From assembly GCA_965644265.1 (NCBI GenBank), contig OZ286469.1, positions 58,776,001 to 58,840,000 of the forward strand: a stretch of DNA of 64,000 bases, written 5' to 3'. The notes below the pieces were generated by a model. That model was given only the letters and a program-made list of their open reading frames with translations, did no database searches and was not told where the DNA came from. Made by a program: the position numbers and the translations under genes. The stretch is from Glycera tridactyla (lineage: Eukaryota). Positions 4,530 to 63,794 of the stretch are shown here, in pieces. The first letter of the stretch is position 1. The number at the start of each line of letters is the position of its first letter.

Positions 4530-7500
4530 TTTTGTTTTTAACAGTTTATTTAAATTCGTTATTTACAATTACGTGCACAAGGCAAACATCTTCAGGATGA
4601 CGACATGAGTAACACACAATCAAATACGAAATGATGGATGGATGTTGAATATTTACAGATGGAAGATGGATGAGATGAGATGACGATATGAGGATGGATG
4701 AGTTTGACCCTTATGTATGCTCTTGTCTTAAATTGTATATAACATTGATAGTAGGACGATTAAATGCTTACAAAAACAATCCATTACCTCAGAAATTTTG
4801 TTTCACAGGATAATTTCTACGTGCAATATCAAGATGCGATTTCAGATAATTCGTTGTTACAGAAGTCACAGAAACTGAGCACTATAAATCAACAAGGTCA
4901 ATATAGTCAATATAATCAATGAAATCATTCTGGTCAATATAGTAAAATGGCAAAATAGCAAAATAGCAATATGGTAAAATGGTAAAATGGCAGATGGCAA
5001 AATGGCAAAAATGGCAATGTGGCAAAGGGGCAACGAAATCTTCAGGAATTTGTGGTGACATTATATCATGGTGACATTATTTCAAGAATCTCAGTTCCTT
5101 CATGAATTTCTTGAAGGCCTCCATATCAAGGTCAGAGCTCTCTGGGTACAAAGTGATGTGAGCATTCCACGAAATTGCTGCTTGGACTCTGAAATTTCTC
5201 TCGCTCATGCTATATTCCACTTTATGATGACGGATATATGATTTTGACCTTGATCTAGTATTATAAAGATGGTCAAAGTCTGCGATTTCACAAATTGGTT
5301 AAGAGGTGAAACTTCCAGATAGCTCTTTCTTGACGTGAAGGATTTCATGTTCACATCTCCTTTCTTTTAGGGTCTGAACCCTCAAATCAGAATGTAGGCG
5401 AGCGGTGCTATACCTTTTAGGACGTTTGTCAATATATCGTAATGCCAAGTTTTGTAGTTTTTGTAGTTTGAATGCATCCCGCTGTCCTAGGCTATCGGAA
5501 ACGATATCCCCATAATCAAAGAGTGGGAGAACCAGGGTTTTGTATAACATCAAGGATAACTCTTTGCTCACCATGGGACGCAATCGTCCTAGGACCCCTA
5601 TTTTGCCGATTGTCTTACTACGAATATGCGCAACATGGTATTTGAAACTCAGGACCGGGTCAAGTACAATTCCAAGATATTTTATAGATACGGGTCTGCT
5701 CAAGGGGGTACCATCTGATGCAACATTTATAGCAGTATAGTTCCTCACATGATGGGACTGACCAAAAACCATATTTGATGTCTTTTTCAAATTAAGTGAG
5801 AGGTGGTTCATACACATCCATGAAGATACTGACCCTAACAGCACATTTAGTTTGGTCTCAAGCGAGATCGGACATGTTTCAGATATGCTGATGGCTGTGT
5901 CGTCAGCGTATAATTTTGTGGACAATCCCAGGGTAAGGGTCACTTCGTCCGGTGTGGCGTTCCTCAAGAAATGATGCTGGTCATTTATATACATGCTAAA
6001 CAGTAATGGGCCTAAGATTGAACCTTGAGGAACGCCGCACCTGACCGCTAGTTTGGTAGATGTGTGTGATGCAACTCTCGTTTCACAGTACCTGTTTCTC
6101 AGGTAGTTACCTACCCACATACATGTCACTCGATCCAATCCGTAACAAGACAGTTTCCTTAGTAGGAGCACATGGTCTACCGTGTCGAAGGCCTTTTTCA
6201 AGTCAAGAAAGATCGTTCCAGTGACACTCCCCCACTCGACCCCCTGGTAAATATTATCAAAGAACTCGAGCAGGCAAGTGCCAGTGGAACGACCCTTCCT
6301 AAAGCCAGACTGCTCCCGACACAGCAGACACATGCGCTCAATATACCCATACAGTTGTTCATGAACAATTCTCTCTAATAATTTACTAGTGGAGGAGAGA
6401 AGACTGATCGGTCTGCAATTACTGGGGGAAGCATGGTTGCCTTCCTTAAATAGTGGTACAACAGTCGCTGTTTTCCATAAATTAGGAAAGATACCTTCAC
6501 TAATACTTCTGTTAAATAGGTATAGAAATATAGGAGCTAGACTGCGTCTACATTTTGAGATAACTTTGGAAGGCGAACCATCCTCACGTCCAGATTTGTT
6601 GGTATTCATTCTCTCAATGGATTCTGGCACAATACACAAATCTACTGTTTCGAAGGCAAATGTATCACATAAAGCAAAGGGGAAATCAGTTAGCGGATCA
6701 ATACTAGATGCAGGGATTGTACTTGCTAATTTGGTACTGACAGAGGCGAAATGCTCATCCATTAATTCTGGAATGAGCACAGGTTCAGTCGTGTCATTGA
6801 TTTTATTGATTGCAGAAGTTGAGTTGTTACCTTTCCGGAAATAGCAAATAGTTTTCCAAATCGATTTGCTGTCTGACCCTGCTTCTTTCAACTTGTCTTC
6901 AACATATGTCTTTTGTAAATGTGATTCTAGATTAGAAGTTTGTCTTAATAGATTCTTTTTTACAGCCTCATTTTCTGACGATGGACCCAGTCTAAAGTTA
7001 TTACTAGCCGTTTCCCACTCGCATACCAAATCCAAGTACTCTCCCGTTATCCAGTCAGGGGCTCCCTCACGAACTGTGTATCTTTTGATTGGGATACATT
7101 TGTCAGCAATTTCACATATTTTTGAAAAAGCATCCTCTGTGCACTGGTTCAGATCATGTGTATCATCTAGGTAAATTGACCAATCAACTCCATCCAGTTC
7201 ACGTTCTATTTCTTCAAAATCTGTCTTTTTAAAATTACGCAGGAAAAGATACTTCCCTTTATTCGAGTGTCTAGCCTTTTTGCGTGTAGTGAATATTAGG
7301 GCATGATCTGAAAGACCTAAGTCGACAGCACCTGCAATTCTATAATTGGATGGATTCGAGATATAAATATGGTCTATGTTTGAACTACATGTGGCAGTGA
7401 CTCTGGTCGGGACCTCAATGAGCTGTTTCAGTTGGTTTGCAGAACTAAATTCATTCACTATGGTTTTTGATGTGCCTCGTTTTGAGATGTCTAGATTATC

Positions 7501-8200
7501 ATCACCAAGTATCACTATGTCGCTGCAACCAATATTGGTGATATCTAGAATTTTATTTTCTAAAATCTCAATTGCGTTGCGTGCATTGCCAGAAGGAGGG
7601 CGATACATTCCGCATATATATGTAGGTCTTGTATGTGGTAAATGTAATTTCATCCATAGGCATTCTATGTCACTGTTACTCAAAGACCACTCCTACATTG
7701 TCTCGTGGACTCGGTCTTCTCCATAATATATCATGAGGCCATCTCCTCCTCTATTTCCACTCCCGCCATCACGATCAAGACGCTCAAAGTTGTATCCAGG
7801 GATTTGTAACTCTGCATTCGAAATGGAATAGTTTAGGAACGTTTCTCCCAGGATTAAAATGATAAGGCCACTTTCTCTGAGCAATAATTCAATGTCGCTA
7901 ATTTTTTGAGTAATACTTCTGATGTTCAGGTAGCCGATACTGATGCCATTTAAAAGTTTCAGATCTTTTGAATTTTTTACATTATTGGCGGTCGCTGGAG
8001 TAATGCGTGGCATATTTCGTGGGAGGCGATGGGTTCTGGGAACAGATGCGTTAACTGGATTGAGTTGGTTGGTCGTGCGAACATACTCAGGGTCTGATGA
8101 TGATGAGTGATGAGATGAATGCATGAAAAATAAGCTGACTTAGTCAGCAGCACAAGAAAATAACAGTAATAATTACAAGAAAAAACAGATTAAATTAAAC
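4530..8200 (-). mobile_element. Non-LTR retrotransposon, CR1 group (L2/Crack/Daphne-like)
   Basis: APE+RT ORF2; 3' UTR with 8-bp GGCAAAAT repeats (4940-5030); minus-strand AATAAA near 4545-4550 followed by an A-rich tail. Confidence 0.85.
5299..8124 (-). pseudogene. LINE ORF2 (APE endonuclease + reverse transcriptase) with one in-frame TAG
   Basis: APE motifs YLNIRSI, LGETFL, GMYRPPS, ILGDDN, SNIDHIY, SDHALI. RT motifs FLDLKKAFDTVDH, GVPQGSILGPLLF, YADDT, KYLGIVLD. ORFs 7693-8124 and 5299-7683 are in one frame, separated by TAG at 7693-7695 (HETM*EWSLSNSDIECLW). The C-terminus continues frameshifted to ~5085. Confidence 0.95.
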
Positions 8201-19947: not shown

Positions 19948-20134
19948 TATCATATGAGGAAAGACTGAGGAAGCTTGAGATGCCGAGGCTTGCTTACAGA
20001 CGTCTGGGAGGGGGGACATGATAGGGACATTCGAAATTGTTAACAACGAGGGCGGGTATGAGGACCGAGTAGCAGTTGGTCCGCTCAAACCTAGCACAGT
20101 CACACAGACGAGGGGACATCGCTACAAGCTAGAG
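19948..20134 (+). pseudogene. CR1 RT C-terminal fragment, left part
   Basis: YEERLRKLEMPRLAYRRLGGDMIGTFEIV...TQTRGHRYKLE, typical CR1 ORF2 end motifs (one slip in a G run). Confidence 0.85.
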
Positions 20135-21385
20135 CAGTATGGAAAGCCATCGATGTCATATTTGGATTTCTATACACGTTACAATGCTAACGCGTTAGCA
20201 TGCCAACGCGAGAGAATGCTATGGAAAGCCATCGATGTCATATTAGGATTTCTATACACGTTAGCATGCTAACGCGTGAGAATGCTAACGCGTGAGAATG
20301 CTAACGCGTTAGCATTCTCACAGTTGACTATTTCAGCCAATGAATGGTCTCCATTTTGAAAATGAACCAATCACATAAGCGTGAGCATTTGTAGGTTCCT
20401 ATGAAGTCACACGTTAGCAATTTGCTAACATGCACCCATGGGTGTGTGGCAGCTCTTCTTGAAAGCCAACATGTAGACACCATATTTTGCTAACACGTTA
20501 GAATGCTCACGCGTTAGAATGCTCACGCGTTAGGATGCTCATGCGTTAGAATGTTGACACGTTAGAATTCTAGCGTATGACAATGCTAACGCGTGACAAT
20601 GCTAACACGTTAGAATGCTAACACGTTAGCATTCTAGCGCGTGAGAATTGTCACGCGTTAGCAATATATGAATGCACTGCCCATATCAGCATATTCAAAT
20701 TCGCTGTGATTATGGTGATTCATGCATTTTACCATTTAGTTTCCCTACCACCCCCCCCCCCCAACAATGGGCATGGACTAAGTGGTCAATGTCATTATTG
20801 CTCACACGTGACTTTTCATCGCTAACACGTTAGCATTCATTGCCTACGCGTTACTCTTATTGCTAACGTGTTAGCAATAATTGCCTACTCGTTAGTTTCA
20901 TTGCTAACGTGCTAGCAGTCATTGCTCACGTGTGACCTTTTATTGCTAACGCGTAGGCTTTAATTGCTAACGCGTAGGTTTTAATTGCTAACGCGTAGGT
21001 TTTAATTGCTAACGCGTAGGTTTTAATTGTTAACGCGTAGGTTTTAATTGCTAACGTGTAGGTTATAATTGCTAACACGTAGGTTTTAATTGCTAACGTG
21101 TAGGCTTTCATTGCTAACGTGTAGGCTTTCATTGCTAACGCGCTAGCAGTCATTGCTCACGTGTGACCTTTTATTGCTAACGCGTAGGTTTTAATTGCTA
21201 ACGCATAGGTTTTAATTGCCAACGCGTAGGTTTTAATTGCTAACATGTAGGTTATAATTGCTAAACGAAGGTTTTAATTACTAACATGTAGGCTTTCATT
21301 GCTAACGTGTAGGCTTTCATTGCTAACGCGTTAGCAGTCATTGCTCACGTGTGACCGTTTATTGCTAACGCGTAGGTTTCAATTG

Positions 21386-22465
21386 CTAACCAACCAACCA
21401 ACCACCCATTCAACCAACCAATCATGTAACCAACCAACCAACCACCTAACCACCCACCCATCCAACCAACCAACCAATCACCCACTCAACCAACCAATCA
21501 CGTATCCAACCAACCAACCACCCACCAACCAACCAACCATGTAATCATCCATCCAACAAACCAGCCACCCACCCAATCAGCCAACCACCTAAGCAATCAT
21601 CCAACCAACCACCCACCTACACACTCAACCACCAATCCAACCATGTAACCAACCAACCAACCATGTAACCAACCACCCAACCAACAACCCAACCACCCAA
21701 CTAACCACCCAACCAACCGCCCACCCATCCAACCAACTACCCACTCAACCAACCAATCACGTAACCAACCAATCACCCACCCAATCAACAATCCACCTAA
21801 GCAATCATCCAACCACCCACCCACCTACACATCCACCCAACCATGTAACCAACCAACCAACCATGTAACCAACCAACCAACCATGTAACCAACCAACCAA
21901 TCAACCAACCAAAAAACCAATCAACAACCCACTCACCCATCCAACCACCCACCCACCAAACCAACCACCTAACCAACCACCCAACCAACCACCCACCCAT
22001 CCAACCAACCAACCACCCACTCAACCAACCAATCATGTGACCAACCAACCACCCACTCAACCAACCACATAACCAACCACCCAACCAACAAACTAACCAA
22101 CCACCCACTCAACAAACCAATCACGTAACCAACCAACCACCCACTCGACCAACCACATAACCAACCAACAAACTAACCAACCAACCACTCAACCAACCAA
22201 ACACCTGAGCAATCATCCAACCACCTAAGCAATCATCCAACCAACCACCCACCTACACACCCACCCACCAACCCAACCATGTAACCAACCAACCAACAAC
22301 CCAACCAACAAACCAATTAACAACCCACCCGCTCACCCACCCAACCAACCAACCACCCGCTAACCAACCAGCCAATCAGCCAACCATCGAACCAAACACC
22401 CAACCACCACCCACCCACCCAACCACTCAACCAACCACCCAACCAACCAACCAACTAACTACCAT
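21386..22465. repeat. (CCAA/CCAC)n degenerate microsatellite tract
   Basis: About 1.08 kb; a short inverted counterpart (TTGG/TAGG)n lies at 23370-23478. Confidence 0.95.
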
Positions 22466-23370
22466 GTTCATCTGCATGCCGCTCACCATTTCAGGCCTAC
22501 AGGCCTAGTTATCAGTTGAAACAATACATGCAATGGTGGTTTGGTCCATTATTGTTGAAGGGGGTATAGGTTTAGCTGTATAGCAAGAGGTACCAGGTAT
22601 GCAAATGGAAATACATATTCATGGAGATGAGGTGACAGGTCGGCTAATATATTATGTATTCATTCAAATGATTGTGAATCATTAATGAATATTCATTAGT
22701 CAGACATCAAACACCCAATGCTAACGCGTTAGCATGCTAACGCGGGATGATGCTCACACTTTACTGTTCTCACGGGTTAGAATTCTAATGCGTGAGAATT
22801 CCTACACGTTAGAATGCTAACGCGTGAGAATTCCTACACGTTAGAATGCTAACACGTTAGTATTCTCCCGCGTTAGCATGCTAACGCGTTAGCATTGTAA
22901 CGTGTATAGAAATCCTAATATGACATCGATGGCTTTCCATAGAATGCTAACACGTCAGCATGCCAACGCGGGAGAATGCTGACACGTTAGCATTCTAACA
23001 CGTAGGAATTCTCACACGTTAGAATTCTAACATGTGAGAATTTTAACGTGTGAGCATTATCACGCGTTAGCATGCTAACGCGTTAGCATTGGGTGTTTGA
23101 TGTGTGACTAATGAATATTCATTAATGATTCACAATCATTTGAATGGATATACATCATATATTAGCCTACCTGTCACCTCATTTCTCTACAGTTACATCA
23201 TCTCAATGAATATGTATTCTCATTTGCATACCTGGTACCTCGTTGCTATACAGCAAAACCTATACCCCCTTCAACAATACTGGACCAAACCACCGTTGTA
23301 TGTATTGTTTCAACTGATAACTAGGCCTGTAGGCCTGAAATGGTAAGCGGCAAGCAGATGAACATGGTAG
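22460..23370. repeat. Inner palindrome of the foldback element
   Basis: 22460-22740 is the reverse complement of 23080-23370. The centre holds TGCTAACGCG subrepeats and an extra TIR copy (~22880-22942). Confidence 0.9.
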
Positions 23371-23516
23371 TTGGGTGGTTGGTTGGGTGGTTGGTTGGGT
23401 GGTTGAGTGATTGGTGGGGGGGGGGTGGCTAGGTAGGTAGGCAGGTAGGTAAGTAGGTAGGTAGGTAGGTAGGTAGGTTGAAAGGTCATGCGTGAGCAAT
23501 GGAAGCCTACACGTTA

Positions 23517-24327
23517 AGGCGCCTTTACATAGGGCGGGCGAGGGCAGGCGCCAGTCTGCGACTTCGCGCGATCTTTTTTTCGACCAAATCCGTGTGAATG
23601 CCGTGCGATTCTCACGCGATCCGGGTGGTCCGGGCTGATTTGGCGCCAAGAGGCGGCTTTCCCGCGCAAACACACGGCGTTCCCGCGCCCGCGCGCGGCT
23701 GCATGCGACGACAGGCGACAACGCGCGACTACGCGCGGATTTATGCTGGCGATTTCGCGCGACTTCGTGCGACTGCGCGCGGCGGTCCCGCGGCGTTCGC
23801 GCGACTTCCCGAGACTGCCCGCGACAACGGGCGACGTTCACACGACTGCGGGCGATCTGAAGCGGGGGAGGGGTATAAAAAGGCTGGCGTGGCGCGCATC
23901 GGCCTCATTCCATTCCAGTCTTTCACTCGGTGTGGACGTGTTTTGCTCTCGCTGATTTCTCAGTTTGGATTTTACTTTTGGCTATTTCGAAGCTTTCACG
24001 AAGCTCTTGAGATGGCACCCCACACCCAGCAGACATCGCCCTTCAATGCGACCGCGCGCGGCATCCGTGCGGCAGCCGCGCGACTGCCCGTGACTGCTCG
24101 CGCCAACTCGCGACTCCGGGCGAATTAATTCCAGTCGCGCGATCGTGCGCGAAAGTTTTGAACATTTCAAAACTTCCGCGGCGGCCCCGTAGACACAGGC
24201 GACGGCTCGAGACTTCGTGCGACGACGGGCGACTACGCGCGACCACGCGCGGATTTCTTTGCGACGACGGGCGGATTTGAGATCGCGCGAAGTCGCGCGT
24301 AGTCGCCCGCCCTATGTAAAGGCAGCT
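23517..24327. mobile_element. PIF/Harbinger-type MITE, 811 bp, GC/CpG-rich
   Basis: TIR AGGCGCCTTTACATAGGGCGGGCGA / TCGCCCGCCCTATGTAAAGGCAGCT. TTA duplicated at 23514-23516 and 24328-24330; removing it restores a host-element subrepeat. Confidence 0.9.
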
Positions 24328-25312
24328 TTAGGAATGAGAGCCTACACGTTAGCAATTAAAACCTGCGCGTTAGCAATAAAAAGTCACACATGAGCAATGA
24401 AAGCTAACGCTAATGCATATTATGGAAGCCTACGCGTTAGCAATGAAAAGTCACGCGTGAGCAATGAAAACCTACACGTTAGCAATGAAAGCCTACGCAT
24501 TAGCAATCAAAACCTACAAGTTAGCAATAAAGGGTCACGTGTGAGCAATGACTGCTAACGCATTACCAATGAAAGCCTACGCGTTGGCAATTGAAACCTA
24601 CGTGTTAGCAAAAAGTCACGCGTGAGCAATGATTGCTAACGTATTAGCAATGAAACTAACTCATAGGCAATTATTGCTAACACGTTAGCAATGAAAGGTC
24701 ACGCGTGAGCAATAATGCTAATTATGATGTTGACATTGACCACTTGGTTCATGCTCATTGTTCTGGGGGGGGGGGGGATGGTAGGGAAACTAAGTTGTAA
24801 AAGGCATGAATCACCACAATCAGAGCAAATTTGAATATGCTGATATGGGCAGTGCATTCATATATTGCTAACGTGTGACAATTTTAACGCGTGACAATTC
24901 TAACGCGTGACAATTCTAACACGCAACAATTCTAATGCGCTAGAATGCTAACGTGTTAGCATTGTCACGCGTTAGCATTGTCACATGCTAGAATTGTCAC
25001 ACGTTAGATTTCTAACGCGTGAGCATTTTAACGCATTAGCAAAATATGATGTCTATACGTTAGCTTTCAAGAATAGCTGCCACACACCCATGGGTGCATG
25101 TTAGCAAATTGCTAACGTGTAACTTCATAGGAACACACAAATGCTCACGCTTATGTGATTGGTTCATTTTCAAAATGGAGACCGTTTATTGGCTGGAATA
25201 GTCAACTGTGAGAATGCTAATACGTTAGCATTCTCCCGCGTTAGCATGCTAACGCGTTAGCATTGTAACGTGTATAGAAATCCTAATATGACATCGATGG
25301 CTTTCCATAGTG

Positions 25313-25350
25313 CGGCAACGAGCCCGTTTGAACGTCCGGAAATTTTCTTA
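25313..25350 (+). pseudogene. CR1 RT C-terminal fragment, right part
   Basis: CGGCAACGAGCCCGTTTGAACGTCCGGAAA = RQRARLNVRK, continuing TRGHRYKLE in frame. Confidence 0.8.
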
Positions 25351-26147
25351 TGGCGTAGATGGTGTGAATGCGCAGCTGTAATCGGGCGCTAAACTCTGTC
25401 AAATCTAATTGTGGCGGGTACGTTTCACACGATAAATTCGCCAAGTCTGGTCTGATCTGACTTTCAATGGCACGAATATATTGTATAAGTCTTCCGGTGA
25501 TTATCGAACCCGGTTTTAGCCAGACTTCATGTTTTAGAAGAGGATGCGCCATAATCTCATTGCATTTTTTCAGCGAATCCCCTGGCATTACCTGCGAATA
25601 TTTGTAAGTGAAACAGTGGAGATACGACCGCAGCACTTACCACGAAACCAGCGTGAAATTGACATATTTGGCTATCTAAGGTGAACTATACACGGGAACT
25701 TCAACGAGATTATATTTCTAGTCGCCGGAGATGTCAACAAAGCTTGTCACCGAGTTTTACTTCAATCCGATGCGAATTCGTTATGCTATTGGGGAAAAAC
25801 CTACCCGCCACGATTAAACCTCACAGACTTTACCACCCAACCGACTGACCAACTAAAATCTGTCAACAAGTTGGATTTGATTGAAGGTTGATATTAGAAT
25901 CATTGCCAGCTGCCCATCCCCCACTTGTGACACGATGTATTTCCTTGATGGCCCATCCCACGCTCAATTAACAGATATACATACCCCATACCATAGTTAG
26001 CGACCGCCCTCAGCCTGTGACGTGTGTACATTCCAAGAAAGGACCCCCCTTCTCCCAAGCCTGTCACATACACATGTCAAGATATACACAATCACCCACG
26101 GTGTGTGAGTACAGAACCTCATTTACCGATCCGATCCCCATATTAAA

Positions 26148-53649: not shown

Positions 53650-54753
53650 TTATGTGTTGAAAGGCAAATTGAGCGAGCGACTGAGATCACGTAATTCGTG
53701 CTCGTCATTGACGAAGACGTAGCCCAGTTTACGCATTACGTCACCGCAGGCGTTCTGGACGACCCTCACCACCGGCATCGTCATCTGCGTCCGCCAATTC
53801 ATGCTCGTCGCCGTCGCGTTACGTCGATACGTCAGTAGTTTATGCTCCTTCTTATTGGTGGCGCTGTGACCTCTCCCGCTGATACCGTCCTCTGTCTCAT
53901 CAATCCAGTCCAGCAACTGCTCATCGGGTTCGATATCGATAAATTCATACAGGTTCTCCATCATGTCGCGCGGGCGGGCGGCGAGGTCTTCATAACGGGC
54001 AATATAATAGTTGTCCGTGAATGACGTCACGTTTTGCTCAAACATCTTGGTGACGTAACGTATATCCTGAGCAATATTGGTGCAGTAGATTCGGGCATCG
54101 TTGTACATGAACATAAGCATGTCTTCGTTGACTTTGTTGTAATTAATTTTGCCCATGGTGGCGCGAGAATTGAGGATCCCACGCGGATCGCGGATTAATT
54201 GAACTACTTTATATCCCTCCACCATTAGTGGATGCACTTGTTCGACTTCGTTGATTCGGATTGATTTGATCACGCGTGTGTTGTACGACTGGCAGTCCCC
54301 CGCGATGGCCTTTAAAGGACGCTGTGAACATTTCATGTCCTCTGCATATTTCCAGCAGAATAATCTTTGTCGCCAACTATGCAGTAAGTTACGACCCTTG
54401 CCATCGCGAAATTTGGGATTAGCTTCGGCGATGCCCCAAGTCCTTTGGAATTTGCAGTCAAAGAGATCACGAAAGAGGTCCAGTAACCTGGCAGCAACGT
54501 CACTGAAAGGCACTAAAAAGAAAGGCTCGTACATGTAATAAATGTCATTGTTTTTGAGGAAGAAGTCACTAGTAAATGTAGAGCCAGTGCGGAAAGCGCC
54601 ATGGATAATGATTTTGGTGACGTCGTCTGTTTTCGCCCTCTGGTGTTTCTTCTCGGAAGCGAGTTTTAGAACATTGTCCGCTGCCATCTCTGTTGACGCA
54701 CGGTAGCGCACGTTGATTTCAGGGTCAACTTCCACACCTTCCAAACATGGCGT
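53650..54753 (-). CDS. Carbohydrate sulfotransferase (CHST1/3/4/5-like, Gal/GlcNAc 6-O family), catalytic exon, 367 aa
   Basis: 5'-PSB IIIHGAFRTGSTF; YYMYEPF; VIKSIR; 3'-PB QLIRDPRGILNSR; RYEDLAARP; W-x4-T and C-terminal CGDVMRKLGY. Acceptor TTCTTGTTTTGCAG immediately upstream, phase 0. Confidence 0.93.
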   Translation of the reverse strand, partial: TPCLEGVEVDPEINVRYRASTEMAADNVLKLASEKKHQRAKTDDVTKIIIHGAFRTGSTFTSDFFLKNNDIYYMYEPFFLVPFSDVAARLLDLFRDLFDCKFQRTWGIAEANPKFRDGKGRNLLHSWRQRLFCWKYAEDMKCSQRPLKAIAGDCQSYNTRVIKSIRINEVEQVHPLMVEGYKVVQLIRDPRGILNSRATMGKINYNKVNEDMLMFMYNDARIYCTNIAQDIRYVTKMFEQNVTSFTDNYYIARYEDLAARPRDMMENLYEFIDIEPDEQLLDWIDETEDGISGRGHSATNKKEHKLLTYRRNATATSMNWRTQMTMPVVRVVQNACGDVMRKLGYVFVNDEHELRDLSRSLNLPFNT

Positions 54754-55136
54754 CTGCAAAACAAGAAATAGGTTCATTGTTCAGTATGTCATAGGCTACC
54801 GCAAGACATCACCACCTCGGTGTCATTCTGCGTACATGGGCTCATAATGGCTAGTCGATACACTGGATCGGGCATCACAACCAGACACATTTCACATTTA
54901 CTGACTGTAGTGTATGGGGAAACTTACTGGTCAAATGATTGAGCCATCGAAAAATCGTACTTTAGTTTGCTGGTTCGTGGGTTGGTCGTTTTATGTCCAA
55001 TGGACACCATCTGGGATTCATTGAGACGCTCCTGCAATGGGCTTTGGTGAGGTCACTCAAAATTCATCATTCTGGGTCCATTCCATTGTCGGCTTCATTG
55101 ACTAGAAAATCGTCCTCAATTAGAATATCTCATGTA

Positions 55137-62146: not shown

Positions 62147-62493
62147 CAACCTCCACACAACCACAAATGACAGACACACAACCTAGAGACAACCTCTCCC
62201 AACCAGCTCACAACTGCACACGACCAGTCGTGATTTGCACCCAACCTCCACGCAACTGCTCACAACCTCTGAACAACTGCTCACAACCTCACACAACGGC
62301 ACACAACTGGGGGCGAGGTTGTGAGTGTATGCACAACCCGAACAATATAAAAGCAAGCTATCTCACAACTATCTCCTCACTTTGGAGTTCACTCTTGAAG
62401 AAAGCACATCAGTCCACGTTGCTGAAGACTGCTTAGAATACTGCTAAAGTTCATCCTCGAAGATTTCTGAAGATCTGTGAAGTAGAGCTGATC

Positions 62494-63794
62494 ATGTTCC
62501 AGCCAAATGTCCAAAACCTGCATCTGCTGCAGCTTTGGCTCGAGCAACAAGAACACCAAGCTGACCGAGATGTTGCTATGCTCCAGTACCTTCGTCACCA
62601 ACAAGATGCCCAAAGACCAGTACCCAGACAACACTGGACGAGAGCCTGGCGCAGCCAAACGTTTCGTGAAGAAGTAGGAGCCTACCACCGTCTGATGAGA
62701 GAGCTTGAAAGACATGACCAAGAATCGTTCAAGAATTTCCAACGTATCTCACCGGCCATGTTTCATGAACTACAAGACAGACTCAGACCATGGCTGGAAG
62801 AAAAGAGGACAAAGTTCCGTAAGCCTTTGGATGCAGGGGAAAGACTGGCCATCACCCTTCGTTACCTTACTACAGGGGATAGCTACAGAACCCTGGGGTA
62901 CCACTTCATAGCTGGCCACAATACCATATCCAAGATCGTGCCTGAAGTCTGTGAGGCAATAATTGCTGAGTATGCTGATGAAGTCATCAAACCACCAATA
63001 ACACCCGAAGGTTTGAGGGAAATTGCAGAAGGCTTCCAGGAGAGATGGAACTTCCCACATGTCTGTGGAGTGCTGGATGGAAAACATGTGGCCATACGTT
63101 GTCCTCGTCGTGTGGATCCATTTACTACAATTACAAGAACTACCACTCTATAATCCTTATGGCACTTGTCGACTCCAATTATGTGTTCAGATGGGTCGAT
63201 GTCGGCAGAAATGGGTCATGCTCAGATGCTCAAGTGTTCCAGCATAGCGAACTCCGTGAAGTTCTGGAAGATGGAAGCATCAACTTCCCACCAGCAGAAC
63301 CTCTACCGCATGACACCGAGCCAGTGCCGTACTTCATTCTCGGAGATGAGGCTTTTCCGCTCAAGACATGGCTGATGAAGTCTTTTGCCAAGAGAAACCT
63401 TCAGCACGATGAGAGGGTATTCAACTACCACTTGTCAAGGGCACGAAGGGTGGTTGAGAACTCGTTTGGCATCATGTGTTCGAAATTTTGCTGCCTGCTT
63501 CACACCATGGAACAAGATCCTAATAACGTCATCAGCATTGTCCTTGCCTGCATCTGCCTGCACAACATCATGCGAATCCGTTACCCTGACCACCACATTG
63601 GAGAAGTGGACACCGAGGATCAACATGGACAACTCAACCCTGGAGCTTGGCGGAACCATGGAAACTTGGATGACATTGACCCGTGTCGTGGTGGAAATTG
63701 GGCAACAGTTCGAGCTAAGAGGCAACGCTTGCTGCTGAAGCACTATGTCAACTCAGCAGTTGGAAGTGTTACATGGCAGGATGACAAGGCATGA
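62494..63794 (+). pseudogene. Harbinger (HARBI1-like, DDE_Tnp_4) transposase with a single frameshift
   Basis: FKNFQRIS..F..L; ERLAITLRYLTTG; WNFPHVCGVLDGKHVAIRCP; YYNYKNYHSIILMALVD; LGDEAFPL; LSRARRVVENSFG. A 1-bp loss at ~63112 joins ORFs 62494 and 63045. Confidence 0.93.

What the first reader, a model, noticed from the sequence alone, without database searches (positions are those of the whole stretch)
20135..25312. 5.2-kb Russian-doll giant palindrome that splits a CR1 with frame-perfect junctions
With the nested MITE removed, the whole element reads arm-(CCAA)n-U-centre-U'-(TTGG)n-arm'. The centre is made of the arm's own subrepeats and an extra TIR copy; another TIR copy sits at ~20218. 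Joining the flanks gives AAG CTA GAG|CGG CAA CGA GCC CGT TTG (KLE RQRARL), restoring the CR1 frame. So the ends are either CACTA-like with no TSD, or one base shorter with a 2-bp GC TSD. Insertion order is readable: CR1, then foldback, then Harbinger MITE. There is no coding capacity. Microsatellite length differs about 10-fold between arms.
Basis: seen in the sequence. Interest (0 to 1): 0.75.

Follow-up and report, generated by a model that had tools for sequence, protein, structure and literature searches.

The report
Two nested copies of one transposon
The 5.2-kb "giant palindrome" is not one element: it is two copies of a young, non-coding DNA transposon family, one inserted head-to-head inside the other, which is an ordinary nesting event except that this family lands in its own repeat arrays unusually often.

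Summary

- **Family:** other genomic copies are 2-4 kb, and the 41-nt end occurs exactly 184 times. All end TATGG...CCATA. 15 of 15 copies with both ends have a perfect 6-bp target duplication.
- **What a normal copy matches:** only window 20220-22941.
- **Inner copy:** 20220-22941, flanked by a perfect GAATGC duplication.
- **Outer copy:** 20138-20219 plus 22948-25309, in the opposite orientation. Its duplication has decayed (GAGCAG / GTGCGG, 4 of 6).
- **Proof of nesting:** removing the inner copy and one GAATGC in silico restores a normal outer copy that aligns without a gap to 15 other copies.
- **"Frame-perfect junction":** an artefact.
- **Nested MITE:** 23517-24327 with a TTA duplication, confirmed.
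- **Recurrence:** a second, independent double element exists elsewhere (7.5 kb).
- **Self-targeting:** 6 of 30 sampled ends sit inside another family copy, always in the 6-bp spacer of the family's 16-mer repeat.
- **Superfamily:** TA..TA ends, 6-bp duplications and about 100-nt inverted repeats match IS3EU/GingerRoot. No transposase-encoding partner was found.
- **Earlier notes:** this scan had already noted the family on other DNA of this genome (s1-312454, s1-347632).

The parts
19982..20137 (+). Decayed 3' tail of a LINE ORF2 (left part), ending ...TRGHRYKLEQ. The last two codons, 20132-20137, are the left copy of the outer element's target duplication (GAGCAG).
   Evidence: Translation. 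Six-frame matches at about 51% identity, aligned over query residues 10-52, lie in open frames of up to 1092 aa elsewhere in the genome. The clade (CR1) is not verified.
20138..20219 (-). Outer copy O, terminal 82 nt of its short arm, starting TATGG. Positions 20214-20219 (GAATGC) are the left copy of the inner element's target duplication.
   Evidence: Joined in silico to 22948 onward, it aligns gap-free with the short-arm ends of 12-15 other copies.
20220..22941 (+). Inner copy I, 2722 nt, a complete canonical family member. Layout: about 102-nt TIR; 16-mer arrays (20266-20309, 20488-20661); 21-mer array (20797-21390); CCAA-type microsatellite (21388-22459); unique segment U (22460-22716); 16-mer array (22717-22866); TIR ending CCATA at 22941.
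   Evidence: Aligns end to end with L044 (2654 nt, 84%) and over most of its length with other copies. Arrays. TIR 94/102 identical.
22942..22947 (.). Right copy of the inner element's 6-bp target duplication, GAATGC. It is also host (outer copy) sequence.
   Evidence: GAATGC lies on both sides of 20220-22941.
22948..23516 (-). Outer copy O, continued: 16-mer array (22948-23090), unique U' (about 23100-23365), short TTGG/TAGG microsatellite (23366-23478), then the start of the 21-mer array. Positions 23514-23516 (TTA) are the left duplication of the MITE.
23517..24327 (.). Nested 811-nt MITE with 20-nt perfect terminal inverted repeats and a TTA duplication (23514-16 and 24328-30). The 3-bp TWA type of duplication is typical of PIF/Harbinger.
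   Evidence: two TIR matches, 0 expected by chance. (at least 1049 candidates; 40 scored, 94-98% identical, nearly all aligning over exactly 1-811).
24331..25309 (-). Outer copy O, long arm: 21-mer array (to about 24721), G-run, unique segments, 16-mer arrays and a TIR ending CCATA at 25309.
   Evidence: The alignment to L044 crosses the MITE excision point. This arm differs from the family consensus by 5.3%, against 2.3% for the inner copy.
25310..25381 (+). LINE ORF2 tail (right part): VRQRARLNVRKFSYGVDGVNAQL followed by a stop codon. Positions 25310-25315 (GTGCGG) are the decayed right copy of the outer element's target duplication.

Best explanation
**Shown**
- The region holds two copies of one non-autonomous cut-and-paste DNA transposon family.
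- Family features: ends TATGG...CCATA, about 102-nt terminal inverted repeats, a 6-bp target duplication, and an interior made only of 16-mer and 21-mer arrays, microsatellites and short unique segments.
- An older copy O inserted into the tail of a LINE ORF2.
- Later a second copy I inserted 82 nt inside O's short arm, in the opposite orientation. It duplicated GAATGC, the 6-bp spacer of O's 16-mer repeat.
- Because the two copies face each other, the pair reads as a 5.2-kb palindrome. This is the same geometry as maize 'double Ds'.
- An 811-nt Harbinger-type MITE also inserted into O.

**Inferred**
- The family belongs to the IS3EU/GingerRoot superfamily and is mobilised in trans by an integrase-like DDE transposase encoded elsewhere.
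- The 16-mer units (a 10-bp palindrome of the TAACGCGTTA type plus a 6-bp spacer) are the transposase-binding sites.
- The same arrays are also a preferred integration target, which is why such doubles recur.
For: **Family ends and duplication**
- The three bases outside TATGG vary among about 30 copies.
- 15 of 15 copies with both ends have perfect 6-bp duplications.
- The 41-nt end has 184 exact genomic hits against 0 for the control.

**Nesting in the window**
- Canonical copies match only window 20220-22941, and L044 matches it end to end.
- GAATGC lies on both sides of the inner copy.
- After in-silico excision the outer copy aligns without a gap across the junction to 12-15 copies and regains a 92/102 TIR.
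- Age order: over the terminal 300 nt, O differs from the consensus by 5.3%, I by 2.3%, and most copies by 0-1%. This fits O's decayed duplication (4 of 6; chance of 4 or more matches is about 0.04) and I's perfect one.

**Recurrence and self-targeting**
- A second independent double, L049: outer 7485 nt with GACCTC, inner 3859 nt with GAATTC at position 162.
- 8 of 54 ends abut family 16-mers, all in the same phase.

**Superfamily**
- The literature gives IS3EU as 'always TA..TA termini, TSDs usually 6 bp' (PMC10045372).
- GingerRoot has a 6-bp TSD, 100-150 bp TIRs and GC-rich TSDs (PMC6839031).
- Here the duplications are 54% GC against 43% for the window.
Against: - No autonomous partner or IS3EU-type transposase was linked to these ends. 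The fetched loci hold none.
- IS481-model hits in the genome are mostly long retroelement-size frames, and none lies near a listed TIR.
- No more genome sequence could be cut out.
- The outer duplication is imperfect (4 of 6).
- The empty site could not be shown from a paralogous LINE copy.
- No long read spans the structure, so the assembly rests on internal consistency only.
Confidence: 0.85

Rival explanations
1. One reading: one 5.2-kb foldback transposon with ends at 20135 and 25312, CACTA-like with no target duplication or with a 2-bp GC duplication.
For: The right end read inward begins CACTATGG. Removing 20135-25312 keeps the LINE frame.
Against: - The bases outside TATGG vary between copies.
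- 15 of 15 copies have 6-bp duplications next to TATGG/CCATA.
- Canonical copies equal only the left half.
- The inner copy has its own perfect duplication.
- The frame is kept because 3 + 3 bases of a 6-bp duplication were removed.
Confidence: 0.02
2. The double element formed elsewhere and then transposed into the LINE as one unit, using the outer ends.
For: L010, at a different locus, has the same junction, including the rare GAGAGAATGC variant followed by TATGG, 82 nt from an outer end. Outer ends of a double element should still be usable by a transposase.
Against: - The outer duplication has decayed (2 changes in 12 bases) while the inner one is perfect, the reverse of what unit transposition predicts. 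The numbers are small.
- L049 is a clearly different, independent double.
- The far side of L010 could not be fetched.
Confidence: 0.08
3. Assembly artefact: a palindrome created by a chimeric long read or a collapsed or misjoined repeat.
For: Palindromes are a known artefact type. No spanning read could be obtained, because the runs are short Logan contigs only.
Against: - The arms are only 86% identical and have very different microsatellite lengths.
- A MITE sits in one arm only.
- Every junction carries the duplication expected of real insertions: GAATGC twice, TTA twice, and GAGCAG/GTGCGG.
- A second locus has the same kind of structure with perfect duplications.
Confidence: 0.03
4. The family belongs to a superfamily other than IS3EU/GingerRoot: hAT, P/Galileo, Mutator-like Foldback, Dada, Polinton or Ginger2.
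For: No transposase was linked to the family. A few hAT families have short duplications.
Against: - The duplication is 6 bp in 15 of 15 copies. From general knowledge, hAT gives 8, P gives 7-8 and FB/MuDR give 9-10.
- Dada has no TIRs and targets small RNA genes (PMC3706591).
- Polinton ends are AG..TC and Ginger ends are TG..CA (PMC6839031).
- TA..TA ends with a 6-bp duplication are stated to be the IS3EU/GingerRoot signature (PMC10045372).
Confidence: 0.12

Closest known systems
IS3EU / GingerRoot DNA transposons (non-autonomous derivatives)
   Same: TA..TA termini, a 6-bp target duplication, terminal inverted repeats of about 100 nt, and duplications richer in G+C than their surroundings (PMC10045372, PMC6839031).
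   Different: No transposase-encoding partner was found here. The interior is built wholly of tandem arrays and microsatellites. The papers I read do not describe the marked self-insertion into its own 16-mer arrays.
Maize 'double Ds' (one Ds inserted into another in inverted orientation)
   Same: One copy of a non-autonomous element sits inside another copy of the same family in opposite orientation, giving four ends in a ++-- layout. Nested Ds elements are reported to break chromosomes (PMC3260210 for the context; the classic structure is from my own knowledge).
   Different: - Different superfamily (hAT, 8-bp duplication).
- Here the two copies are 14% diverged and old, so the structure is probably inert.
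- It recurs at other loci, whereas no double Ds was found in the B73 reference (PMC3260210).
Classical foldback elements (Drosophila FB, sea urchin TU)
   Same: Long inverted arms made of short tandem subrepeats, with no coding capacity in most copies.
   Different: - Those give 9-bp (FB) or 8-bp (TU) duplications (my own knowledge, not tested here).
- Here the canonical element has only about 102-nt TIRs.
- The long arms of the window's structure come from nesting, not from the element's own design.
Self-nested MITEs in plants (Tourist-in-Tourist type nesting)
   Same: A non-autonomous family inserts into its own copies far more often than its genome share predicts (my own knowledge of the plant MITE literature).
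   Different: Here all 8 events fall in one exact phase of a 16-mer subterminal repeat, which points to a specific site or protein-bound target rather than a general AT-rich preference.

Membership tests
IS3EU/GingerRoot | 6-bp target site duplication | tested here: met
   15 of 15 two-ended copies have perfect 6-bp duplications. So do the inner copies of the window and of L049.
IS3EU/GingerRoot | 5'-TA...TA-3' termini | tested here: met
   All copies begin TATGG and end CCATA, and the bases outside vary. The criterion is from PMC10045372 and PMC6839031.
IS3EU/GingerRoot | Terminal inverted repeats of about 100-150 bp (GingerRoot) | tested here: met
   94/102 identical in the inner copy and 92/102 in the restored outer copy. 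Similarity is lost beyond about 102 nt.
IS3EU/GingerRoot | Mobilised by an IS3/IS481-like DDE transposase that lacks the HHCC zinc finger | tested here: inconclusive
   - No such ORF is present in the 300 kb of fetched loci or in the window.
- The one rve ORF found (L045) has an H2C2 finger and lies in a foreign insertion.
- None of those hits lies near a listed TIR.
   The 'CAC/CAG' bases are flank and vary between copies. The duplication is 6 bp.
Dada | No TIRs; insertion into tRNA or snRNA genes; 6-7-bp duplication | tested here: not met
   The family has about 102-nt TIRs and dispersed, unrelated targets. The criteria are from PMC3706591.
Foldback (FB/Mutator-like) and hAT/P | Duplication of 9-10 bp (FB/MuDR) or 7-8 bp (hAT, P) | tested here: not met
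   The 7th and 8th flanking bases do not match between the two sides. The family lengths are from my own knowledge.
PIF/Harbinger MITE (the nested 811-nt element) | 3-bp TWA duplication and TIRs; a DDE_Tnp_4 transposase partner | tested here: inconclusive
   A TTA duplication and 20-nt perfect TIRs are shown. A DDE_Tnp_4 ORF lies at window 62982-63791, but the MITE's TIR is not found beside it.
CR1 LINE (host of the insertion) | CR1-clade reverse transcriptase / ORF2 | tested here: inconclusive
   - Only a decayed tail of about 75 aa remains.
- About 51% identical tails lie in frames of up to 1092 aa in the genome.
- phmmer against 1.8 billion proteins found nothing, and the Atlas gave no named family.
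- 'LINE ORF2 tail' is supported. The clade is not.

The most novel reading that the evidence does not exclude
The family homes to itself. Its transposase integrates preferentially into the 6-bp spacer between the 10-bp palindromes of the family's own 16-mer subterminal repeats, which are probably its binding sites. Double, palindromic and potentially chromosome-breaking elements would then be a regular by-product of a recently active IS3EU-like transposon in an animal genome.
Probability: 0.35. Interest if true: 0.5.

Novelty: new member of a known kind. Interest (0 to 1): 0.3.

Why it matters
- **Corrects a misreading.** An apparently exotic structure (a giant foldback with no target duplication) is two ordinary nested insertions, and the family's real ends and duplication are now fixed.
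- **Documents a young family.** Most copies differ from the consensus by 0-1%. The family has IS3EU/GingerRoot-type hallmarks in an animal genome, and this superfamily is little studied.
- **Raises one testable point.** About 20% of sampled ends are inside another copy of a family that makes up well under 0.1% of the genome, always in one phase of a 16-mer repeat. That suggests target choice guided by the element's own repeats. Inverted doubles of this kind can destabilise chromosomes while the family is active.

Tried and rejected
- **Autonomous partner.**
  - ORFs in the long or unpaired loci L031, L035 and L045 are an MFS gene fragment, low-complexity frames, and an H2C2+rve integrase in a foreign insertion.
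  - All ORFs of 180 aa or more in the fetched DNA are LINE RT/endonuclease, a sulfotransferase, a thioesterase, a PDZ domain or a PIF transposase. None is IS3EU-like.
  - The genome-wide IS481-model search gave mostly retroelement-size frames.
  - No listed TIR lies near the mid-size candidates.
- **Empty site from LINE paralogues.** A gapped pattern across the junction gave 0 hits. The left flank has only three partial DNA paralogues. The right flank has none once a neighbouring high-copy repeat is left out. The 23-aa right peptide matched only itself.
- **CR1 identity.** phmmer of the 52-aa tail gave 0 hits, and the ESM Atlas returned only unnamed clusters below the recognition level.
- **Long-read check of the assembly.** Only two runs were offered, both kept as short Logan contigs. 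No record spans the region.
- **Joined protein search.** I did not search the LINE tail joined across the insertion, because it has no reference. The two pieces were searched apart.
- **Hairpin or replication origin of the palindrome.** Rejected because of the separate target duplications and the 14% divergence between the arms.
Full report
**1. Observation**

The region is strongly palindromic.
- Inverted repeats: 20219-20762 vs 24767-25310 (544 nt, 86%), 22363-22586 vs 23243-23466 (224 nt, 82%), and 22647-22866 vs 22941-23160 (220 nt, 86%).
- Four copies of the terminal sequence: two on the + strand starting at 20138 and 20220, and two on the - strand ending at 22941 and 25309.
- Tandem Repeats Finder reports 16-mer arrays, 21/42-mer arrays, a degenerate CCAA array of 1072 nt (21388-22459) and short GTTG/TAGG arrays of about 113 nt (23366-23478).
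- No credible ORF lies inside. The four ORFs of 90 aa or more are microsatellite or GC-rich low-complexity frames.

**2. True ends and target duplication**

The 253-nt right end has at least 377 first-look candidates in the 2.04-Gb assembly, and the scored ones are 94-97% identical. The 41-nt end has 184 exact copies, against 0 for the reversed control.

- Across about 30 loci the sequence is constant from TATGG inward, while the bases just outside vary.
- In 15 copies with both ends, a perfect 6-bp direct repeat lies immediately outside TATGG...CCATA, for example CCAGAC, GAACAC and CATACT.
- In the window the element therefore runs 20138-25309, with duplication copies GAGCAG (20132-37) and GTGCGG (25310-15).
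- These match at 4 of 6 positions (chance of 4 or more is about 0.04). One of the two differences is a CpG-type transition.

Removing them deletes exactly one duplication's worth of sequence, which is why the LINE frame seemed "perfect". "CACTA-like, no TSD or 2-bp GC" is refuted.

**3. It is two elements**

- Other copies are 1.7-4.1 kb and match only window 20220-22941. L044 (2654 nt) matches it end to end at 84%.
- That segment is flanked by GAATGC on both sides, at 20214-19 and 22942-47.
- I removed it and one GAATGC, and also the MITE and one TTA, in a script. This leaves a 1630-nt outer copy.
- The long arm of that outer copy aligns to other copies across the MITE excision point.
- Its short arm aligns without a gap across the inner-copy excision point to 12-15 copies.
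- The restored outer copy also regains a normal TIR of 92/102, against 94/102 for the inner copy.

The "Russian doll" is therefore outer copy O (20138-20219 plus 22948-25309, minus orientation) carrying inner copy I (20220-22941, plus orientation) 82 nt from O's short-arm end.

- The "extra TIR copies" are the ends of I.
- The 10-fold microsatellite difference is the difference between two separate copies. Element length varies widely in the family, mostly through its microsatellites, and some copies carry a second, GTGA-type one.

**4. Order and age**

Over the terminal 300 nt of the long arm, 14 copies differ from the majority consensus by 0-1%. I differs by 2.3% and O by 5.3%.

- O is therefore the oldest copy sampled, which fits its decayed duplication.
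- I has a perfect duplication.
- The MITE is 98% identical to its closest relatives.
- Order: LINE, then O, then I and the MITE, in unknown relative order.
- The family as a whole was active very recently.

**5. The nested MITE**

It spans 23517-24327 (811 nt), with 20-nt perfect TIRs and a TTA duplication. At least 1049 genomic candidates exist. The 40 scored are 94-98% identical and nearly all align over exactly 1-811, which confirms the boundaries. The TWA duplication fits PIF/Harbinger. No partner was identified.

**6. Recurrence and self-targeting**

L049 (C10:23177394-23184878) is an independent double.
- Outer copy: 7485 nt with a perfect GACCTC duplication.
- Inner copy: 3859 nt with a perfect GAATTC duplication, 162 nt from the outer short-arm end and inverted.
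- The outer copy is restored by in-silico excision.

Among the 30 ends that seeded the loci, 6 abut another family copy. Among all 54 ends in the fetched DNA, 8 do.
- Every one of these duplications is GAATGC, GAATTC or GCATTC.
- That hexamer is the 6-bp spacer between the 10-bp TAACGCGTTA-type palindromes of the 16-mer unit, always in the same phase.
- Four of them lie 82, 114, 130 and 162 nt from a short-arm end, positions that differ by multiples of 16. The rest are in other 16-mer arrays.
- The family makes up well under 0.1% of the genome (a few hundred copies of about 3 kb), so this is an enrichment of a few hundred-fold.

The 15 non-self sites give a weak palindromic target profile, G at -4, A at -1, S at duplication positions 1 and 6, T at +1 and C at +4. 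The 16-mer spacer fits this profile at all six positions. The motif alone is too common in the genome to explain the enrichment. Transposase bound to the arrays, or local hopping, probably adds to it. That last point is inference.

**7. What it is**

TA..TA ends plus a 6-bp duplication are given as the signature of IS3EU ("always TA..TA termini; TSDs usually 6 bp") and of GingerRoot (6-bp TSD, 100-150-bp TIRs, GC-rich TSDs) (PMC10045372, PMC6839031). Here the ends, the duplication and the roughly 102-nt TIR all fit. The duplications are 54% G+C against 43% for the window.

- Dada is excluded: it has no TIRs and targets small RNA genes (PMC3706591).
- Polinton (AG..TC) and Ginger (TG..CA) ends do not fit (PMC6839031).
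- hAT, P and FB/Mutator give longer duplications (my own knowledge).
- The defining transposase was not found, so membership rests on structural hallmarks only.

**8. Host sequence**

The flanks translate to a decayed LINE ORF2 tail...RGDMIGTFEIV...TRGHRYKLEQ on the left and VRQRARLNVRKFSYGVDGVNAQL-stop on the right. Tails about 51% identical lie in frames of up to 1092 aa elsewhere in the genome. The CR1 clade could not be verified. No paralogous empty site could be recovered.

**9. Assembly**

Only short Logan contigs were available and none spans the region. An artefact is unlikely for four reasons:
- The arms are 14% diverged.
- A MITE sits in one arm only.
- Every junction carries its own duplication.
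- A second locus has the same kind of structure.

**10. Verdict**

This is an ordinary nested insertion of a new, young, IS3EU/GingerRoot-like non-autonomous family, misread as a single giant foldback. The one feature of some interest is the phase-exact self-insertion into the family's own 16-mer arrays, which repeatedly produces double-Ds-like inverted doubles. Earlier notes of this scan on other DNA of this genome had already recorded TATGG ends with a 6-bp duplication (s1-312454) and IS3EU-type ends (s1-347632). A 7.46-kb foldback note (s1-333444) may be the L049 locus.

Noticed in passing
G000:C10:90503917-90507262 (not fetched): Four exact copies of the 41-nt element end, all on the + strand, spaced about 1.1 kb apart. 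This looks like a tandem array (satellite-like amplification) derived from the element.
   Followed up: no
L011:1388-1750 (C1:77395293-77395655): A 363-nt mini derivative made of two long-arm ends facing each other, with a perfect GACCTG duplication. This is a true small foldback/MITE form of the family.
   Followed up: partly
G000:C18:58470734-58482174 (only L023 fetched): A pair of exact ends 11.4 kb apart, with a further copy nested inside at 58473115. It is either a larger nest or a candidate for a long (autonomous?) element.
   Followed up: no
window 62982-63791 (+), with a further ORF at 62437-63150: A PIF/Harbinger-type transposase ORF (DDE_Tnp_4, E 4e-30). The nested MITE's TIR is not found beside it.
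   Followed up: partly
window 5302-7692 (-): A 797-aa open LINE ORF with endonuclease and RVT_1 domains. It is a different LINE from the one split by the insertion.
   Followed up: no
window 53653-54780 (-): A 376-aa open frame with sulfotransferase domains (E 5e-13), probably a host gene exon or an intronless gene.
   Followed up: no
window about 25390-25470: A short high-copy repeat just right of the LINE tail: 2281 first-look candidates at 88-90% identity.
   Followed up: no
L032:860-1900 (C10:97525680-97526720): Some family copies carry a second microsatellite of about 1 kb, of GTGA/GGTGA type, that is absent from both window copies. Much of the size variation in the family comes from microsatellites.
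   Followed up: partly
window 22700-22960: The short arm alone folds as single-stranded DNA into a long nested hairpin (-71 kcal/mol, z = -12.5), because adjacent 16-mers are mutually complementary.
   Followed up: partly
L045:10-1749: A 579-aa ORF with an H2C2 zinc finger and an rve integrase core, in a foreign insertion that interrupts a family copy within its microsatellite. It is retroelement-type, not the family's transposase.
   Followed up: partly
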